IMG/VR virus record: IMGVR_UViG_3300020608_000013
Span: 62,001 to 126,000 of that record
Direction: 5' to 3' (one strand)
DNA: 64,000 nt
Shown here: piece after piece, positions 29,606 through 57,360 of the stretch
Numbering within the stretch: position 1 is the stretch's first letter
Layout: each line of letters starts with the position of its first letter
The notes under the pieces: model-generated
Databases searched by the model: none
What the model was told of the DNA's origin: nothing
The model's input: the letters and a program-made list of their open reading frames with translations, nothing else
Translations under genes and position numbers: made by a program

Positions 29606-29657
29606 TTAATTGCTCCTTGTTAATGAACGTTGCTAATGAGCAAGTAAGCTCATATTT

Positions 29658-29665
29658 ATAATATA
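29658..29665 (-). promoter_or_regulatory. Putative early promoter motif TATATTAT upstream of chmA
   Basis: AACCG-TATATTAT, 53 nt upstream of the chmA start. Confidence 0.55.
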
Positions 29666-29751: not shown

Positions 29752-30813
29752 ATGTTAAGAAAATATTTCGATAAAATAAGTGGTACACACGTTAGTACCT
29801 ACGCAAACGATGATTGGTTACGGCGTACCGTTAGTATATCATCAGCGCAAGTCCGACGATATTATATGTACTCAAACCATTATATAAAAACCGAGCATTT
29901 ACTCGTTAGGTTTTTACGTTCCCTTGACCTTCCAATTGAGAAAAGTAAAGAGGCTTATTTAAACCACGCTAAAGTACAAGGTATGCAACTGAGTAAAGTT
30001 TTCCAATTCACTTCACCGTTACAACTTGGTGTGCTCCACGATGATGTATTGTATAGTGGTAAACACCTTATCTACACTTTTAAAGGTAGTTCAAATAACC
30101 AGGTTAGTTGGTATCGACGAAAACCCATACGTTTAATCTATACGCGTGCAAACTACTTAGACTTCCCGCCTCTACACGGTATATTGCCGAGCACCATGAC
30201 AATCATATCGATTAACTTAATAGACCTTATGAGTATGTATTATGAATATAAGGTACACCGTTCTCGTTTAAACAGTCTTTACCGAAAAGTTCGACCCGAT
30301 TTACCTATTTCGGCAGGACATTTTATAAACACAATGATACTACCTTCCTTATCCGTCGATTCTTTTTTAAGTACAATAACAAACAATATTATTAAACCAA
30401 AATCGAGAGAGAAGGCAAATATACACTCTTTCACATTAAGGGAGTATACAAAAGAATTTGATGAAATTATTGAAAACTACCGACAGAATGTAGTGTTACA
30501 GGGTAGTGATTATAACACTGCTTTAGTTAACTACCCTAATTTACTCTACAAGCAACCTAATGGGTTCTTATCCTATAAACTACCCTTTAGTACCTTTAAC
30601 ACTATATCACGGCTTGTAGCTTACCTCATGCGGTTAGACCATATGTATAGTTATATCCATCTAGACCGTGAAGGATTTAAACAATCTAATGGTAGTGAAT
30701 ACTATTACCTCACTCGTTTCTCTCGTTTACTTAAACGTGATAACCAAATGAAGACCTTAGTAAGTGCCTTTAACGACACCGCTTTAGAAGAACGTTTTAA
30801 CTACTTTTTATAA
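29752..30813 (+). CDS. Conserved phiKZ gp52-like protein
   Basis: 353 aa, divergent from chmA; assigned by synteny. Confidence 0.55.
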   Translation: MLRKYFDKISGTHVSTYANDDWLRRTVSISSAQVRRYYMYSNHYIKTEHLLVRFLRSLDLPIEKSKEAYLNHAKVQGMQLSKVFQFTSPLQLGVLHDDVLYSGKHLIYTFKGSSNNQVSWYRRKPIRLIYTRANYLDFPPLHGILPSTMTIISINLIDLMSMYYEYKVHRSRLNSLYRKVRPDLPISAGHFINTMILPSLSVDSFLSTITNNIIKPKSREKANIHSFTLREYTKEFDEIIENYRQNVVLQGSDYNTALVNYPNLLYKQPNGFLSYKLPFSTFNTISRLVAYLMRLDHMYSYIHLDREGFKQSNGSEYYYLTRFSRLLKRDNQMKTLVSAFNDTALEERFNYFL

Positions 30814-30827
30814 AACGACGTAAAAAG

Positions 30828-30852
30828 CAGGGATCGCGAAACACGATCCCTG
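30828..30852 (-). terminator. Rho-independent terminator
   Basis: 9-bp stem CAGGGATCG/CGATCCCTG; AAAAAG to the left gives a U-tract on the minus strand. Confidence 0.65.
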
Positions 30853-31236
30853 AATATATGAACAACGTACAATTCCCCCATTGGCACTGTCTAAACCAGA
30901 GCTTGAGGAGTAGGACCGCAAAGTCACTACAATCTATTATATAAAATAGGTGTTGTTATTCGATAATCTAATCTAGACCTTCTCAACAACTAACATACTG
31001 GGTTATGCACAAACCTATCTAACATGATAAATCACACTTAGTGAATATTACTTATTATCTCTTTTTCTACTATACACTGGTAGTCAAACTTAGTGTAACC
31101 TAAACACTTTAACATTGTTGGATAATCTATACAGATGATTTACCATTAAACACTATTACTAAATTCATCTACACAATACCTATCCTTAGTCTATGTGTTA
31201 TTAATTCATCTTCTATCTGATTATACAAGATGGAAA

Positions 31237-31329
31237 ACTAAACTATAAATACTATCCTTTAAAACAGGGCTACCCCCCCCCCAAGTATGCTTAGTTTAGT
31301 GTTTGATGGCTCGTTCCTTCGTAACTCGT
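31237..31329. repeat. Structured poly-C element, copy 1
   Basis: ACTATCCT..AGGGCTAC10AAGT inside stem ACTAAACTA..ATACT/AGTAT..TAGTTTAGT, followed by box CTCGTTCCTTCGTAACTCGT (31310-31329). Confidence 0.8.
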
Positions 31330-31454
31330 ACAATACATTACAACACAAGGTATAAAAATACAGAGTGAAAAATAGGCAAGAAAAAAATAAGGACACAAAT
31401 AAAGTGTACTACGACATTACGCCATAGCACACTCGGTGGGTTAAGGTAACTTAC

Positions 31455-31940
31455 CTATTTACATAACGACGATCTTGTTTTTACCGAAAGTTGATAAACA
31501 TCGTCAACTAAATGGTAGGTCACGTTGAAGGTTTTAAAAACATCACCTCCAAAAGCTCTCATTAGGGCATCAACGTCTATGGGTGTACTACTCCCTATTA
31601 ACTCAGCCACATATTCAGTAGGCTCTTTAGTCTTCAGACCCACAAAATTTAAAAGGTCGTACTTGTTCACCCATCTACTAAAATACGGCTCTACCCGCAC
31701 TAACTCCTCATCCACCTTTCCTATATGGACTATCGCGTCTATACTCCCCTCATGCCATGTAATTTCAAAACGTTTAACTTCGATAGCATCGTAGCCATAG
31801 TGATTATCCAATACTTCATTTATACCATATACATCCCCTTCACCACACCCAGTGGTGACGACATCAATCAGTTCTAAGTGATCGAAATCGTATACTTCGC
31901 ACAATCCTTTACAAAGGTGGACTTTCATTGATTTAAACAT
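31455..31940 (-). CDS. Hypothetical acidic protein; the only convincing gene in the non-coding island
   Basis: 161 aa, GAG RBS and TATATTAT motif upstream. Confidence 0.7.
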   Translation of the reverse strand: MFKSMKVHLCKGLCEVYDFDHLELIDVVTTGCGEGDVYGINEVLDNHYGYDAIEVKRFEITWHEGSIDAIVHIGKVDEELVRVEPYFSRWVNKYDLLNFVGLKTKEPTEYVAELIGSSTPIDVDALMRAFGGDVFKTFNVTYHLVDDVYQLSVKTRSSLCK

Positions 31941-31987
31941 AACGCTATCTCTTAATGGTTATTGACTACTCCATTATAGTCATGTCT

Positions 31988-31995
31988 ATAATATA
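31988..31995 (-). promoter_or_regulatory. Putative early promoter motif TATATTAT
   Basis: 48 nt upstream of the ATG at 31940. Confidence 0.5.
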
Positions 31996-32421
31996 CCCGT
32001 ATACCAATCTATATTAACCACGATACTTCACTCGACAGACACAAGTAGACCACCTGTAACGCCTTAACGCTACTGATGGTTATACTACGTTCCAACAACT
32101 CACTCTACGCTATCTACAGTCCACGTTATAAGGTTTTCACAACCTAAGTGATGCCTAACCTCACTATCGTGTTATAAACCCTCTCCCTACTCAGTATACC
32201 TTTAACCTTTCTACGACGTTATTACAGTTACCTCACTTTGGTGTTATCAGACCAACCCTAATGACCCATAGGGCATAGGGATAGACATAACGGATACTGT
32301 ATACCTTATGGCTTAACGTTATCACTATGTTATACTTTACCTTAATCGTCTACCTTCGTCTTCCTATATGCACCCAAGGCACGGAAGGTATTATATATCA
32401 TCATGATTACACTATAGGTTA

Positions 32422-32518
32422 ACTATATTACGACACTATACACTATCCTCTTAAGAAGGGCTACCCCCCCCCCCAAGTCGTAATATAGTAGAAGAGGACT
32501 CGTTCCTTCGTAACTCGT
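32422..32518. repeat. Structured poly-C element, copy 2
   Basis: ACTATCCT..AGGGCTAC11AAGT inside perfect 13-bp stem ACTATATTACGAC/GTCGTAATATAGT, followed by the identical box CTCGTTCCTTCGTAACTCGT (32499-32518). Confidence 0.8.
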
Positions 32519-33239
32519 TCAACACATAAATAAAGATTGGGGTTGCTATTCGGTATGGGTAAAAAGTAGTCAACTTAAAATAGACCTCAGTAGTCATCTA
32601 CAGATGGTTAAAAAATAGGCTTAAGTAACACACCTCTGGTAGCGGTCTCACCCACCAGACTAGACTCATGTCGAGAAGGTAGTCTAGACTAACCAAGTGG
32701 TACACTAACACAATAACACAGTAAAGCTAGGTTTACCTACCAGTCTAGGCAGAAAGTCTAGAATGGGTAACAGAGTCACGCTTTGTGCTTAGGGAATATT
32801 CTCTACCAGGTTAATAAACGTGCTAATCGTTAAAGTTTCTGGCCAGTCTACTAACCCTTATATTTTTAATATTAGTTAGGTTATTTAGCCTTAGCTTACA
32901 CGCTTAGCGAAGGGGGTAGTTAATGTACCGTTATAAACCTCTCAGTGACGCTAGATTGATTTTTTAACCCTATAGGCAAGCTTACCTACTACCTAGCGTG
33001 GTGATGGGCACTATAGCCCTTTAAAACAGATTTAAGCAATCAGTGTACATACGCCATTGTCAATGACCTTTAACGAGTTTTTGGGTTAGTCACGACACTT
33101 TCTGGCCATTAGTTTCAGAGGACTACCGTAGACCTTATTCCAGCGATCGATCATTGATCAGACGATCTGGAATTAGTCCCTAACGGTGTCGTTTTTAAGG
33201 GTTTTATAGGGTGTCTAACTATTGACCATTTTAGGATAT

Positions 33240-33279
33240 ACCCTTCTATATATAATCTATAGATTATATATAGAAGGGT
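33240..33279. repeat. Perfect 40-bp palindrome with no spacer
   Basis: ACCCTTCTATATATAATCTA|TAGATTATATATAGAAGGGT equals its own reverse complement. Confidence 0.95.
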
Positions 33280-33354
33280 GGATGGAATCTGAAAAATGGT
33301 ACTTTTAGGTCGTGTTATACAAGTAGTCGCGCACGCCCGCATGGTTCCTATTTA

Positions 33355-33381
33355 GTTTATAATATCTAAGATATTATAAAC
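33355..33381. repeat. 13-1-13 palindrome flanked by GC-rich CGCG tracts
   Basis: GTTTATAATATCT-A-AGATATTATAAAC. Confidence 0.9.
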
Positions 33382-33432
33382 ATGCGCGAGCGCGTGGGCG
33401 CGAACGCGTGCGGTACTTTAGATTTTATTTCT

Positions 33433-34112
33433 AGCGATCGTGATGGTTTAATTCACCGACCTGTTAAAAAAATCAGGTGGAAGCGAAGAACATCGATCGC
33501 TCTTCAGTTCCAAGCTCAGCTCCCTTAGCGAGAGACTACACACCACCCCTGTCTTAAACCCCAGCCGCTGAAAGCTTGGGCTGGGGTTACTTCGATTCAA
33601 CCGTGGAAATTAATAATCACCACCGAGGGCCTTTTTCTAACCATCGAACCAACCCCCCGAAAATTTCAAAACCCTGAAACACAATGGTGAACGTCGTCAG
33701 GTTGAACACCATGACTCGTCCTGACTTAGGGGTCAGGACTTCGTGGCATACACAGACCTAGCCTATATCGCTCTGTAATCGATTCTAAGCCATTTTTTAC
33801 CTTGAGATGATTCATGTTAGGGGTAGGGGTAGATAAAGGCGATATGAGCTTCTGAGGGCTATAGAAAAAAGATAAACCAAACTAAACAAAACCGAAGGTT
33901 TATCACTAAAATCCCTCGAAGAGGGGATAGAGCGTCTGCAAGACAAAAGTATTATAACCCCGCGACCCCAGGCGAAAAAAAGCGCTGCGAGCGAAACTGG
34001 AGAAAACTGAAAGGTAGATTGTGCGCTATATGGGCGTGAGATCGCCATACAGACGTTTTAGGGGGCTAGCCTATGTTTTGGTATAGGTGGGTGTTATAAA
34101 GTGGCTTAAAAT
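33433..34112. ncRNA. Candidate structured non-coding RNA or ssDNA-structured origin segment
   Basis: Stems at 33433-33501, 33557-33588, 33684-33712, 33718-33739, 33871-33904 and 33911-33928, plus long-range pairing 33782-33796/34098-34112; no credible ORF. Confidence 0.4.
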
Positions 34113-34148
34113 GCATTCTACGGTATTTTAGCATTTTGAGTAATGTAG

Positions 34149-34168
34149 TGATAATTGATCAATTATCA
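34149..34168. promoter_or_regulatory. Perfect 20-bp palindrome, operator-like
   Basis: TGATAATTGATCAATTATCA, about 105 nt upstream of the 34275 gene. Confidence 0.6.
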
Positions 34169-34274
34169 TTCACTATTAAACGACAAATCACTTTGAAAAA
34201 TTTTAATGGTGTTGTGCTGTAGTACAAGATCGGTGTTTTGATAAATTGTTAAAAACAAAGGAGTTATTAAGGAA

Positions 34275-35108
34275 ATGGATACGATTAACGGTGTTATAAA
34301 TGCCATCAAGCATCAGATACCTCGGGCGATTCTAGAAGAAACGTTTAATGAACCTGATGCTGGGTTGTTACGCAGTATCGATGATGGAATTTACCGCAAT
34401 GTGATACTAGGTCGAGTCGTTCTAGATTGTAACCTAATCGGAGGTGAAGAGGCTTTAATTTACATAAGTCAAAGCCAAGCCGAACGGGTTAATGACATGG
34501 TGTCGCTTTATGATATACCTGATAGTGCGACACAAAACAGAGAGGTTATATCGCCACTTAGCGTGACTTATGCGACCTCATTAATGTCTAACGCAGGGTC
34601 TAGTCTTTCGATGGGTAGGGCACGGCACATGGGCGCTTCTCAATCGTCTGGTGGATGTAGTCAGAGTGAGCTTTTAAAGCAAGCTAAGAGTATGTTAGAC
34701 ACGATGAAACCATTACCCGTACTTTCCCACACTAACCTGAAAATGACCGCACGTAACGTACTAAGAGTGACGGATAGTAGTGGTATTTTTGGTGATTTCA
34801 TTCTTCGTTGTATCTTGGGTAATTCAGCGAATATGGAGAACCTCCAACCCTACTCTCGATTAAATTTCAACGAGCTTTGTGTACTGGCTTGTAAGGCGTA
34901 TTGTCATAACGAACTTGTCATTAAGCTGAATAAACAAAAAATTGCGTATGGGCAAGGTCTAGGGGTTATAAAGGATATTGTCGATGAGTATAGTGAGGCG
35001 AATGAACTTTACTTAGATTATCTGAAGAATGTGTGGACGACCGTTGCTTTTTGCAATGACCGCGATACCTACCGTAGATTTATCTCGTTGCAAATACCTA
35101 ATTTTTAA
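34275..35108 (+). CDS. Conserved phiKZ-like core protein
   Basis: 277 aa, AAGGA RBS; N-terminal AIKHQIPRAILEETF resembles a phiKZ-group core family as recalled. Confidence 0.6.
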   Translation: MDTINGVINAIKHQIPRAILEETFNEPDAGLLRSIDDGIYRNVILGRVVLDCNLIGGEEALIYISQSQAERVNDMVSLYDIPDSATQNREVISPLSVTYATSLMSNAGSSLSMGRARHMGASQSSGGCSQSELLKQAKSMLDTMKPLPVLSHTNLKMTARNVLRVTDSSGIFGDFILRCILGNSANMENLQPYSRLNFNELCVLACKAYCHNELVIKLNKQKIAYGQGLGVIKDIVDEYSEANELYLDYLKNVWTTVAFCNDRDTYRRFISLQIPNF

Positions 35109-35125
35109 GAAAAAAAAACAAATGA

Positions 35126-35167: not shown

Positions 35168-35683
35168 TTACTCTGTTAAAATTTTAGCATATTCACTCGC
35201 CGCCTCGCTTAACTTTTTGGCGTGGTCTTCCTCACCTTCCGTATATTTAGTAAAGCTGAATACAGGGAGTACGCTTTTACGAAGACGGTTGTCACCATCC
35301 TCTACATCTTTTCCTGGGAGCTTTATCTCGCGAACCACACGTCCGTGATACTCGTGCTTTCCATACGTTGCGCTCAATTGAACCCTGGTGAGTTCAGAGT
35401 TGTCTTTAAGTGCTTTCGCACCTTCATCAAGTAACGCGAGGTCCATTTCCCGCGCATACTTTTCATCGAACTCTTGATATTTTAAGGACACTTCATAATC
35501 CAAGCCCTCTTGTTCAAGGGCTTGTTTATAGGCGCTCTCGTCCACTGTAGTGGTCATGGTTTTTGTTTTCTTATCTTTTTCTCCTATTTCTTTACTTAGC
35601 GCTTCCCCAATATTCTTTTTTAGAATATCGTTTATAGTTAGAAGCTGTTTAGTTTCGATGTTAGGACTATTTGGTTTAGACAT
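35168..35683 (-). CDS. Highly charged (K/E-rich) hypothetical protein, probably early
   Basis: 171 aa, AAGGCG RBS, TATATTAT motif upstream. Confidence 0.7.
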   Translation of the reverse strand: MSKPNSPNIETKQLLTINDILKKNIGEALSKEIGEKDKKTKTMTTTVDESAYKQALEQEGLDYEVSLKYQEFDEKYAREMDLALLDEGAKALKDNSELTRVQLSATYGKHEYHGRVVREIKLPGKDVEDGDNRLRKSVLPVFSFTKYTEGEEDHAKKLSEAASEYAKILTE

Positions 35684-35722: not shown

Positions 35723-35761
35723 AATGACATAGTTTAACTACTATGTCATTCATATAATATA
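35723..35761 (-). promoter_or_regulatory. TATATTAT motif (35754-35761) followed by an 11-bp leader hairpin (35723-35750)
   Basis: Stem AATGACATAGT/ACTATGTCATT lies immediately downstream of the motif on the minus strand. Confidence 0.5.
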
Positions 35762-39985: not shown

Positions 39986-40041
39986 TACATGTCCTCTTGT
40001 TTTTTAAAAAAAAGATGTTTGAGTTTAGTAAACTCATTATT

Positions 40042-40049
40042 ATAATATA
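40042..40049 (-). promoter_or_regulatory. Putative early promoter motif TATATTAT
   Basis: AAACC-TATATTAT upstream of 39985, followed by a small hairpin at 40020-40036. Confidence 0.55.
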
Positions 40050-44193: not shown

Positions 44194-44250
44194 AATACAG
44201 TCTTAAACCCATTAGTCTAAGACTGTATTATGAGTCGTAATTATAATATA
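44194..44250 (-). promoter_or_regulatory. TATATTAT motif (44243-44250) followed by a 12-bp leader hairpin (44194-44229)
   Basis: AAACG-TATATTAT; stem AATACAGTCTTA/TAAGACTGTATT. Confidence 0.5.
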
Positions 44251-57302: not shown

Positions 57303-57352
57303 TAGTTTTGTACTCCTTGTTCAGAATTGTGATTTTACAATGTGTCGTTAAT

Positions 57353-57360
57353 ATAATATA
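57353..57360 (-). promoter_or_regulatory. Putative early promoter motif TATATTAT
   Basis: GAACA-TATATTAT just downstream of a terminator and 51 nt upstream of the ATG at 57302. Confidence 0.55.

What the first reader, a model, noticed from the sequence alone, without database searches (positions are those of the whole stretch)
33433..34112. Dense hairpin cluster: candidate large structured ncRNA
At least six GC-rich stems in about 680 nt (for example AACCCCAGCC/GGCTGGGGTT, GTCCTGAC/GTCAGGAC, AGCGATCG/CGATCGCT enclosing ACCTG/CAGGT, GATAAACC/GGTTTATC), plus a 13/15 long-range match between 33782-33796 and 34098-34112. I could not match tRNA, tmRNA, RNase P or intron signatures. Large phages are known to carry big structured RNAs, so this may be a new class.
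Basis: partly seen in the sequence, partly recalled or inferred. Interest (0 to 1): 0.6.

Follow-up and report, generated by a model that had tools for sequence, protein, structure and literature searches.

The report
Hairpin-rich noncoding island in jumbo phage
The hairpins are real and sit in a conserved, non-coding stretch of the largest gene-free gap of a phiKZ-like giant phage, exactly where the genome's strand composition flips, but nothing yet shows that they form one large folded RNA rather than a DNA-level or leader-type control region.

Summary
Perfect stems of 8 bp or more are enriched 3- to 6-fold over the genome mean. Four of seven sub-blocks fold better than shuffles. Two do not, and one of those is the best conserved.

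The window comes from a 212-kb phiKZ-like jumbo phage assembled from a hot-spring or biofilm metagenome. The finding is the right end of a 3.4-kb ORF-poor island (30814-34274), by far the largest in the genome.

- **Non-coding:** small ORFs are broken by indels in relatives and have no Pfam or PHROG hits.
- **Constrained:** blocks of 91 and 65 nt have no change, while synonymous divergence (dS) in the adjacent gene is 0.138.
- **No known RNA family:** Rfam and tRNA/tmRNA scans found nothing.
- **No covariation or strand signal:** the only relatives are at least 93% identical, so power is low.
- **No RNA data.**

Just upstream lie perfect palindromes, one of which keeps its symmetry through matching TA insertions in both arms. 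An orientation-independent GC-skew switch maps into the island (permutation p<0.001).

My best reading, at low confidence, is a cis-acting control region, a candidate replication origin or transcription hub built from discrete hairpins. A new structured RNA remains possible.

The parts
30814..34274 (.). ORF-poor island of 3.4 kb holding only one 161-aa ORF. It is the largest gene-free stretch of the 212-kb genome, and the finding is its right-hand end.
   Evidence: The next largest gaps are about 0.5-0.65 kb.
33433..33501 (.). Hairpin H1: outer 8-bp stem AGCGATCG/CGATCGCT with inner stem ACCTG/CAGGT.
   Evidence: z -1.7 on +, -2.9 on -. The inner part is rearranged in the relative, where a TTCACC/GGTGAA stem forms.
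33557..33588 (.). Hairpin H2: 10-bp GC-rich stem AACCCCAGCC/GGCTGGGGTT with a 3-bp apical extension. No T-run follows on either strand.
   Evidence: It lies inside the invariant block 33529-33619.
33718..33739 (.). Hairpin H3: GTCCTGAC-TTAGGG-GTCAGGAC.
   Evidence: It lies inside the invariant block 33707-33771.
33871..33904 (.). Hairpin H4: GATAAACC/GGTTTATC with an 18-nt A-rich loop.
   Evidence: block z -3.9 on +. The two substitutions in the relative (33878 C>T, 33902 A>G) would both leave G-U pairs on the + strand.
33913..33925 (.). Hairpin H5: CCCTC-GAA-GAGGG. Read on the - strand it is followed by ATTTTAGT, making it weakly terminator-like.
33782..33796 (.). Left arm of the 13/15 long-range complement. 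Its partner is 34098-34112.
   Evidence: The match is 12/15 in the relative: one mismatch is repaired and two outer pairs are lost.
34098..34112 (.). Right arm of the 13/15 long-range complement.
33785..33877 (.). Most conserved block outside the hairpins: 1 change in 93 nt. It has no significant predicted structure and contains TAGGGGTAGGGGTAG.
   Evidence: z -0.65 / +0.87
33225..33300 (.). Palindrome P1, just upstream of the finding. Its core is a perfect 40-nt AT-rich palindrome at 33240-33279.
   Evidence: In the relative a TA is inserted in both arms (left arm on L007, right arm on L004, same sample), so symmetry is kept.
33329..33412 (.). Palindrome P2: GC-rich arms around the perfect 27-nt palindrome GTTTATAATATCT-A-AGATATTATAAAC (33355-33381). 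Each half resembles the phage's TATATTATA promoter motif with one core mismatch.
   Evidence: PWM score only 5.0, genome-wide rank 163. The palindrome is invariant in the relative even though a 14-nt deletion lies next to it.
34215..34274 (+). Invariant 60 nt directly upstream of the DUF7484 start codon, likely its own proximal promoter and ribosome-binding site. A variable spacer (34100-34215) separates it from the hairpin cluster.
34275..35108 (+). DUF7484 gene (phrog_3179), conserved in phiKZ-like phages and the first gene to the right of the island.

Best explanation
The hairpin cluster is the conserved right-hand part of a cis-acting non-coding control region in a phiKZ-like jumbo phage. 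It is most likely tied to a lytic replication origin or a transcription hub.

On this reading the stems act as discrete local elements. They could be protein-binding or cruciform-prone inverted repeats in DNA, or stem-loops in an untranslated origin or leader transcript running rightward toward DUF7484. They are not one compact large ncRNA.

Shown:
- the stretch is non-coding
- there is local sequence constraint
- the hairpins are discrete
- perfect palindromes lie adjacent
- a GC-skew switch maps to the island.

Inferred:
- origin function
- any transcription
- which strand matters.
For: 1. The island 30814-34274 is the only large gene-free region in a genome that is 94% coding.

2. A GC-skew component independent of gene orientation flips between genome 93,940 and 95,151 (window 31,940-33,151) and flips back near 149.5 kb. 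Between-group sum of squares is 353 against a maximum of 173 in 1000 permutations. The local cumulative-skew minimum lies at window ~32,500-34,000.

3. Four consecutive palindromic elements run from 33138 to 33501. They include a perfect 40-nt AT-rich palindrome whose two arms both gain a TA in the relative, and a 27-nt perfect palindrome that is invariant. The genome's highest hairpin density (7 per 680 nt, a maximum shared with windows near 97.1 and 119.1-119.2 kb) is reached in the window starting at 33201.

4. Conservation is at the sequence level. It covers loops and unstructured linkers: 0/91, 0/65 and 1/93 changes, against dS 0.138 in the adjacent gene and a variable patch of 10/57 between the conserved blocks. 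Block 33772-33870 is conserved yet shows no excess structure.

5. There is no covariation and no strand asymmetry in wobble-compatible changes.

6. Distant relatives have DUF7484 at a divergent junction with only 120-380 nt upstream. The island is therefore a lineage-specific expansion of an intergenic control region.
Against: - There is no direct evidence of origin activity.
- Skew switches in phages can reflect expression class or mosaic ancestry rather than replication.
- The second switch point gives very unequal arms (54 and 158 kb).
- Ralstonia phage RP12 shows no comparable switch, and a second IMG/VR relative is ambiguous.
- No conserved iterons were found. The AGTCTAG repeats at 32650-32770 are not kept in the relative.
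- The fitted skew change point and the strongest palindromes lie just left of the finding's coordinates, so the 680 nt could be a separate element.
- Several stem substitutions are G-U compatible on the + strand (33474, 33620, 33878, 33902, 34047, 34069), as an RNA would allow. A strand-neutral count does not make this significant.
Confidence: 0.4

Rival explanations
1. A + strand structured non-coding RNA: either one RNA of about 0.7-0.9 kb, several smaller ones, or a long structured 5' leader of DUF7484. It would be transcribed rightward from about 33385.
For: - The stretch is non-coding, constrained, and matches no known family.
- The dinucleotide-shuffle z-score is stronger on the + strand (-2.9 vs -2.0).
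- In the clear hairpins, the substitutions turn Watson-Crick pairs into G-U pairs or back on the + strand: 33474, 33620, 33687/33696, 33878, 33902, 34047, 34069.
- The second half of the + strand is purine- and A-rich.
- The 13/15 long-range helix could close a ~330-nt domain.
- No + strand terminator lies before DUF7484.
- sRNAs derived from 5' UTRs are known in phiKZ-like phages (PMC11512511).
Against: - No RNA data exist.
- RNAalifold finds 0 compensatory pairs.
- The strand-neutral wobble test is not significant: 17 vs 12.
- Two of seven blocks lack excess structure.
- + strand energies are ordinary against the genome background.
- The only promoter-like site upstream scores poorly.
- A variable spacer and a separately conserved proximal region suggest DUF7484 has its own promoter.
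- No homologue was found outside near-identical relatives.
Confidence: 0.3
2. Leftover or weakly functional spacer DNA: remnants of lost genes with their terminators, plus insulating hairpins that stop read-through between the divergent units.
For: - Relatives have coding genes right up to DUF7484.
- Parts of the island diverge faster than synonymous sites: 32600-33100 at 13-32 changes per 100 nt and 34000-34200 at 12-18.
- Nearly every intergenic region of this phage carries a hairpin (49 found).
Against: - Invariant blocks of 91 and 65 nt alternate with a variable patch on a scale under 100 nt. That argues for selection rather than decay or recombination patches.
- No protein remnants were detected by tblastn against the phage's own proteome, by Pfam or by PHROGs.
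- The phage's usual terminator-type hairpins are 11-19-bp perfect stems next to gene ends. These are 8-10-bp GC-rich stems far from any gene end.
Confidence: 0.17
3. Small protein-coding genes, or RNA decoys or mimics such as solitary CRISPR-repeat-like anti-defence RNAs, hidden among the hairpins.
For: - Several 40-80-codon ORFs exist.
- CCCTC-GAA-GAGGGGATAGAGCG has the general stem-plus-handle shape of some class 1 CRISPR repeats. This rests on memory and was not tested.
Against: - The two ATG-start ORFs (33382-33528 + and 33812-34048 -) are frameshifted in relatives.
- No family hits.
- No direct repeats in the region.
- The host and its CRISPR repeats are unknown.
Confidence: 0.05

Closest known systems
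Transcript-primed phage and plasmid origins (T4 oriF/oriG, T7 primary origin, ColE1 RNA II). Named from established knowledge, not tested here.
   Same: A non-coding region with promoter-like sequence, AT-rich unwinding-prone palindromes and a downstream untranslated, partly structured segment. Here it also coincides with a strand-composition switch.
   Different: No origin activity, R-loop, primer RNA or initiator binding has been shown. There is no sequence similarity. The replication mode and origin of phiKZ-like phages are unknown to me. The two skew arms are very unequal.
5'UTR-derived and intergenic sRNAs of phiKZ-like phages (phiKZ, 201phi2-1; PMC11512511)
   Same: Non-coding structured sequence upstream of a conserved gene in a nucleus-forming-type jumbo phage.
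   Different: Those sRNAs were mapped experimentally, and one of them is conserved across genera. This region is 0.7-0.9 kb, confined to one lineage, unmapped, and lies upstream of a different gene (DUF7484).
Large structured RNAs associated with phages or prophages (GOLLD, ROOL) and other Rfam large ncRNAs
   Same: Size class of several hundred nucleotides, phage context, many stems.
   Different: cmscan against all 4227 Rfam families gives nothing at gathering score and only miRNA-type noise at E<=10. There is no covariation-supported architecture.
This phage's own intergenic hairpins (terminator-type) and its TATATTATA promoter-plus-hairpin units
   Same: Perfect inverted repeats in non-coding DNA. 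None have a T-run, like the phage's usual hairpins.
   Different: The usual ones are 11-19-bp stems with 3-7-nt loops within tens of nucleotides of gene ends. The 21 strong promoter copies all lie on the - strand about 50 nt upstream of genes. The cluster's stems are shorter, GC-richer, far from genes, and carry no strong promoter match.

Membership tests
Any Rfam 15 family (RNase P, tmRNA, group I/II introns, riboswitches, GOLLD, ROOL, HEARO, OLE, ribozymes) | Covariance-model score at or above the family's gathering threshold | tested here: not met
   0 matches in the whole window at gathering score. At E<=10 over 30500-34500 there are only miRNA, SymR and Xist noise hits far below threshold, mostly on the palindromes.
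tRNA / tmRNA | Cloverleaf or tmRNA detected by ARAGORN | tested here: not met
   0 genes in the window
Novel structured ncRNA (generic criteria) | Compensatory base-pair covariation across homologues | tested here: inconclusive
   0 of 238 alifold pairs are compensatory, with covariation term +2.06. Only one independent relative lineage at 93-96% identity is available. In the hypervariable segment further left (32530-33140), both strands give the same apparent covariation, 9 vs 8 pairs, so there is no signal there either.
Novel structured ncRNA (generic criteria) | Discrete transcript from one strand | not testable with these tools
   Only DNA runs (Logan contigs) hold the sequence. No RNA run was found.
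Novel structured ncRNA (generic criteria) | Folding energy well below shuffled and genomic background, on one strand | tested here: inconclusive
   z -2.9 (+) and -2.0 (-) from 20 shuffles. Per-block z-scores are mixed and roughly symmetric between strands. Against the genome background the + strand gives z -0.75 and -0.99.
Intrinsic (rho-independent) terminators | GC-rich stem followed by a T-run | tested here: not met
   No + strand site between 33385 and 34275, and one weak - strand site at 33925-33913. The count for the scanned region equals the shuffle expectation.
Phage promoter class TATATTATA(A)nnnTG + hairpin (defined here) | High PWM score, about 50 nt upstream of a gene | tested here: not met
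   The best site inside the finding's coordinates (33433-34112) scores below 3. The half-palindrome at 33370 (+) scores 5.0 (rank 163), against 19-27.6 for nearly all of the gene-proximal sites.
Replication origin of a dsDNA phage | Strand-composition (GC-skew) switch independent of gene orientation | tested here: met
   The change point falls within the island, p<0.001 by permutation. It is not reproduced in RP12.
Replication origin of a dsDNA phage | AT-rich unwinding element, palindromes, and conserved repeated initiator sites | tested here: inconclusive
   A perfect AT-rich 40-nt palindrome and a 27-nt palindrome are present and maintained. No conserved iteron set was found.
Replication origin of a dsDNA phage | Initiation of DNA synthesis at the site | not testable with these tools
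   Needs marker-frequency analysis from raw reads of infected cells, or 2D gels.
Protein-coding gene(s) | ORF kept open in relatives, or a family match | tested here: not met
   Indels at 33391 (14 nt), 33631 and 33974 break the two ATG-start ORFs, 33382-33528 (+) and 33812-34048 (-). The 50-aa TTG-start ORF 33448-33600 (-) carries no indel. No Pfam or PHROG hit at E<=1.
CRISPR array or repeat-based RNA (ToxI-like, mini-array) | Direct repeats at regular spacing | tested here: not met
   No direct-repeat family within 33433-34112

The most novel reading that the evidence does not exclude
The conserved core (about 33485-34112, possibly starting at the palindrome near 33385) may encode a new kind of + strand structured RNA specific to a thermophilic lineage of phiKZ-like jumbo phages. 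One possibility is an origin-priming or R-loop-forming transcript that couples transcription to the start of replication at the skew switch. Another is a free-standing large RNA with a role in the phage's infection cycle.
Probability: 0.2. Interest if true: 0.75.

Novelty: new variant of a known kind. Interest (0 to 1): 0.42.

Why it matters
To my knowledge the replication origin and the non-coding regulatory repertoire of phiKZ-like (nucleus-forming type) jumbo phages are still largely unknown.

Here a unique 3.4-kb gene-free island contains three things together: a conserved hairpin cluster, symmetry-maintained palindromes, and a gene-orientation-independent GC-skew switch. That makes it a concrete, testable candidate for an origin or control locus in an uncultured thermophilic member of the group.

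If the cluster turned out to be a discrete RNA, it would add a large phage RNA with no known family. If not, the finding is still an unusual but ordinary-in-kind cis-regulatory region.

Tried and rejected
- **Known RNA families and tRNA/tmRNA:** nothing found.
- **DNA similarity to 50,697 phage records:** none.
- **Homologues through the flanking DUF7484 protein:**
  - IMG/VR gave one relative at 31% identity, with no gap upstream.
  - The 5.8-billion-protein word search gave only a 97% cluster and one 34% hit.
  - The contigs fetched (L003, L004, L006, L007, L008) are all one lineage at 93-99% identity.
- **Pattern scans:**
  - The H2 hairpin pattern in viral contigs returned 10 unrelated terminator-like hits.
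  - The exact H2 33-mer and the repeat-core 20-mer returned none.
  - The H3 pattern in JGI metagenomes returned 10 copies of an unrelated repeat family with no further similarity.
- **Gap as a decayed paralogue:** tblastn of the phage's own proteome against the gap gave only noise.
- **Palindrome 33355-33381 as a pair of divergent promoters:** attractive by eye, but the PWM score is low (5.0 and below 3), so I demoted it.
- **My hand count of + strand G-U-compatible stem changes (8 of 8):** this did not survive a strand-neutral recount, 17 vs 12.
- **Apparent covariation in the hypervariable segment 32530-33140:** the reverse strand matches it, so it is an artefact of two-sequence alifold.
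- **GC-skew switch at the DUF7484 locus in relatives:** absent in RP12 and ambiguous in the IMG/VR relative.
- **Failed run:** a first genome-wide fold scan timed out and was redone with smaller windows.
- **Not used:** structure prediction, complex prediction, the protein atlas and the big protein search. No protein question remained open.

Full report
**What the window is.** The window is bases 62,001-126,000 of a 212,020-bp IMG/VR virus record. The record has a 141-bp end overlap, which indicates a circular or circularly permuted assembly. The window encodes several proteins typical of phiKZ-like jumbo phages:
- a divergent family-B DNA polymerase (PF20286)
- a split RNA-polymerase beta subunit (phrog_2987)
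- a class II ribonucleotide reductase
- DUF7484/phrog_3179, whose 203 tblastn hits are almost all in phiKZ-like jumbo phages.

Genome GC content is 38.7%, and HIP1 is not enriched. Sequencing runs holding near-identical DNA are biofilm, hot-spring and hydrothermal-vent metagenomes. All are DNA runs.

**Checking the observation.**
- 33433-33440 / 33494-33501, enclosing 33459-33463 / 33474-33478
- 33557-33566 / 33579-33588 (10 bp, 7 GC pairs)
- 33718-33725 / 33732-33739
- 33871-33878 / 33897-33904
- and a further one, CCCTC-GAA-GAGGG, at 33913-33925.

The long-range complement 33782-33796 / 34098-34112 is 13/15. Matches that good at 100 nt or more separation occur 0.03 times per dinucleotide shuffle.

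Statistically the cluster is real but moderate:
- The whole-region z-score is -2.9 (+) and -2.0 (-), from only 20 shuffles.
- With 200 shuffles per block, four blocks are clearly structured: 33425-33510, 33529-33619, 33680-33771 and 33862-33935. Block 34050-34140 is weak. Blocks 33772-33870 and 33936-34060 are no better than shuffles.
- Perfect stems of 8 bp or more occur 4 times in 680 nt, against a genome mean of 1.25. GC-rich ones occur 3 times against 0.46, which puts the region in the top 1.7% of windows.
- Against GC-matched genome windows, the + strand energies are ordinary.

So the region is a string of discrete hairpins, and a compact global fold is not evident.

**Context.** The finding is the right end of an ORF-poor island, 30814-34274. 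This is the largest gene-free stretch of a genome that is about 94% coding.

The island holds one ORFan of 161 aa (31455-31940, - strand). It has a canonical copy of the phage's promoter motif 48 nt upstream and a hairpin after its stop codon.

Immediately left of the finding are three palindromic elements:
- 33138-33172
- 33225-33300, with a perfect 40-nt AT-rich core at 33240-33279
- 33329-33412, with GC-rich arms around a perfect 27-nt palindrome at 33355-33381.

Together with H1 these make four consecutive palindromic hairpins. The window starting at 33201 reaches the genome's highest hairpin density, 7 per 680 nt, a maximum shared with windows near 97.1 and 119.1-119.2 kb.

Distant relatives place DUF7484 at a divergent gene junction with only 120-380 nt upstream. 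A third relative has a gene abutting it. The island is therefore specific to this lineage.

**Non-coding status.** A 14-nt deletion at 33391 and single-base insertions at 33631 and 33974 in relatives frameshift the two ATG-start ORFs, 33382-33528 (+) and 33812-34048 (-). The 50-aa TTG-start ORF 33448-33600 (-) carries no indel. Stop-to-stop ORFs have no Pfam or PHROG match at E<=1. No paralogous protein remnant was detected.

**Conservation.** The only relatives are Logan contigs at 93-99% identity, effectively one independent lineage. The comparison is mosaic:
- dS is 0.138 for DUF7484.
- dS is 0.019 for the next gene and 0.010 for the 161-aa ORF.

Inside the divergent block, the non-coding sequence is very uneven:

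| Segment | Changes |
|---|---|
| 33529-33619 | 0 in 91 nt |
| 33707-33771 | 0 in 65 nt |
| 33785-33877 | 1 in 93 nt |
| 33650-33706 | 10 in 57 nt |
| 34000-34200 | 12-18 per 100 nt |
| 32600-33100 | 13-32 per 100 nt |

At p = 0.126 per neutral site, 91 invariant sites is about 5e-6. Alternation on a scale under 100 nt argues for selection rather than recombination patches.

The constraint covers loops and unstructured linkers as well as stems. The last 60 nt before the DUF7484 start codon are separately invariant, behind a variable spacer. This suggests that the gene has its own proximal promoter and ribosome-binding site.

**RNA-structure tests.**
- RNAalifold on the three available sequences predicts 238 pairs. 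None has a compensatory change, and the covariation term is +2.06.
- In the clear hairpins, the substitutions I inspected by hand turn Watson-Crick pairs into G-U pairs or back on the + strand: 33474, 33620, 33687/33696, 33878, 33902, 34047, 34069.
- A strand-neutral recount, using stems predicted with G-U pairs forbidden in either sequence, gives 17 + strand-wobble against 12 - strand-wobble changes. That is not significant.
- The relative's sequence keeps folding stability only slightly better than the same substitutions placed at random: z -1.4 (+) and -1.6 (-).
- In the hypervariable segment to the left, alifold reports 9 'compensatory' pairs on the + strand. It also reports 8 on the - strand, so this is the background for two sequences at this divergence.
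- No known family matches.
- Pattern scans of IMG/VR and JGI metagenomes returned only chance or unrelated hits.

**DNA-level evidence.** After removing the effect of gene orientation, per-gene GC skew shows a 54-kb domain. Its left boundary lies between genome 93,940 and 95,151, which is window 31,940-33,151 and inside the island. Its right boundary is near 149.5 kb. Between-group sum of squares is 353, against a maximum of 173 in 1000 permutations.

- Left of the island, genes on the - strand have a coding-strand skew of +0.11 and genes on the + strand -0.12.
- Right of it, the values are about 0 and +0.125.
- The local cumulative-skew minimum is at window ~32,500-34,000.

The 40-nt palindrome gains a TA in both arms in the relative. 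The left arm is on contig L007 and the right arm on L004, both from the same sample. Symmetry is therefore maintained. These features are typical of origins or other DNA-level control sites.

There are caveats:
- RP12 shows no comparable switch.
- The two arms are very unequal.
- No conserved iterons were found.
- Skew domains can have other causes.

**The phage's own signals.** I found a motif, TATATTATA(A)nnnTG followed by a hairpin. Of its 23 exact occurrences, 21 lie on the - strand, and the intergenic ones sit typically 40-100 nt upstream of genes. I also found 49 intergenic hairpins, mostly with 11-19-bp perfect stems and without T-runs, that look like this phage's terminators or RNA-end structures.

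The hairpins in the finding belong to neither class. They are shorter, GC-richer, and far from gene ends. The best promoter-like site nearby, the half-palindrome at 33370, scores 5.0 against 19-27.6 for nearly all of the gene-proximal sites.

**Interpretation.** I rank the explanations as follows:
1. A cis-acting control region, a candidate origin or transcription hub whose hairpins act locally (0.40).
2. A + strand structured RNA or long leader (0.30).
3. Weakly functional spacer DNA with insulating hairpins (0.17).
4. Hidden small genes or decoy RNAs (0.05).

The first two are not exclusive. Origins primed by transcripts (T4 oriF/oriG, T7, ColE1 RNA II, from established knowledge) combine a promoter, an unwinding-prone element and a structured untranslated RNA. 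The G-rich sense strands on both sides of the switch would suit that arrangement, but this is inference only.

**Limits.**
- No RNA data were available.
- Only one relative lineage exists.
- The single reads call laid contigs, not raw reads, so depth cannot be used for origin mapping.

Noticed in passing
window 31237-31390 and 32422-32527; third copy at genome 211,805-211,958 (outside the window): A three-copy element. A stem, whose sequence differs between copies but stays complementary, encloses a C10-11 tract (GGGCTACCCCCCCCCC). It is followed by the conserved sequence CTCGTTCCTTCGTAACTCGT. Two copies lie just 3' of - strand genes. Copies A and B bracket the 161-aa ORF unit. No match was found in IMG/VR.
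   Followed up: partly
genome-wide; in the window for example 29657-29665, 31987-31995, 35753-35761, 40041-40049, 44242-44250, 57352-57360 (all - strand): A strongly conserved motif, TATATTATA(A)nnnTG followed by a hairpin. Of its 23 exact occurrences, 21 lie on the - strand, and the intergenic ones sit typically 40-100 nt upstream of genes. It looks like a phage-RNAP promoter class. No equivalent motif was seen upstream of + strand genes.
   Followed up: partly
genome-wide; in the window for example 2720, 11722, 35126, 38544, 48247, 55825: Almost every intergenic region carries one long perfect hairpin (11-19 bp, loop 3-7 nt) without a T-run. These are probably this phage's terminator or RNA-end structures.
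   Followed up: partly
genome 93,940-95,151 and about 149.5 kb (window 31,940-33,151 and about 87,500): A 54-kb GC-skew domain that is independent of gene orientation. Its left boundary falls inside the gene-free island (permutation p<0.001). It may mark an origin and terminus, or a compositional module.
   Followed up: yes
window 32550-33100: A hypervariable non-coding segment, with 9-32 changes per 100 nt against dS 0.138 next door. It includes a run of 18 consecutive listed differences at 32592-32645 that are all transitions. Four AGTCTAG/CTAGACT repeats in it are not conserved in the relative.
   Followed up: partly
window 33240-33279: A perfect 40-nt AT-rich palindrome. Logan contigs of several samples break exactly here, and a (TA) unit is gained in both arms in relatives.
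   Followed up: partly
window 31455-31940 (-): A 161-aa ORFan with a canonical promoter motif and a terminator-like hairpin. It has no homologue outside near-identical relatives and no Pfam or PHROG hit. It shows 4 non-synonymous against 1 synonymous change relative to the close relative.
   Followed up: partly
window 31300-32500 versus 32500-35110 versus 35168-35683: Sharp mosaic of divergence between this genome and the relative from another study: about 1%, then 4-30% (dS 0.138), then dS 0.019. This indicates recent recombination among co-circulating phages.
   Followed up: partly
window 34149-34168: A perfect 20-nt palindrome, TGATAATTGATCAATTATCA, about 110 nt upstream of DUF7484. It is operator-like. 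One arm changes in relatives (C>T at 34160).
   Followed up: no
loci L044-L053 (JGI sediment metagenomes): The H3-pattern scan hit an unrelated multi-copy element with conserved flanks (GGGTCCTGCCAAGGCGTAGTTCCGCAGGGACGC...). It is present twice on some contigs and is not related to this window.
   Followed up: no
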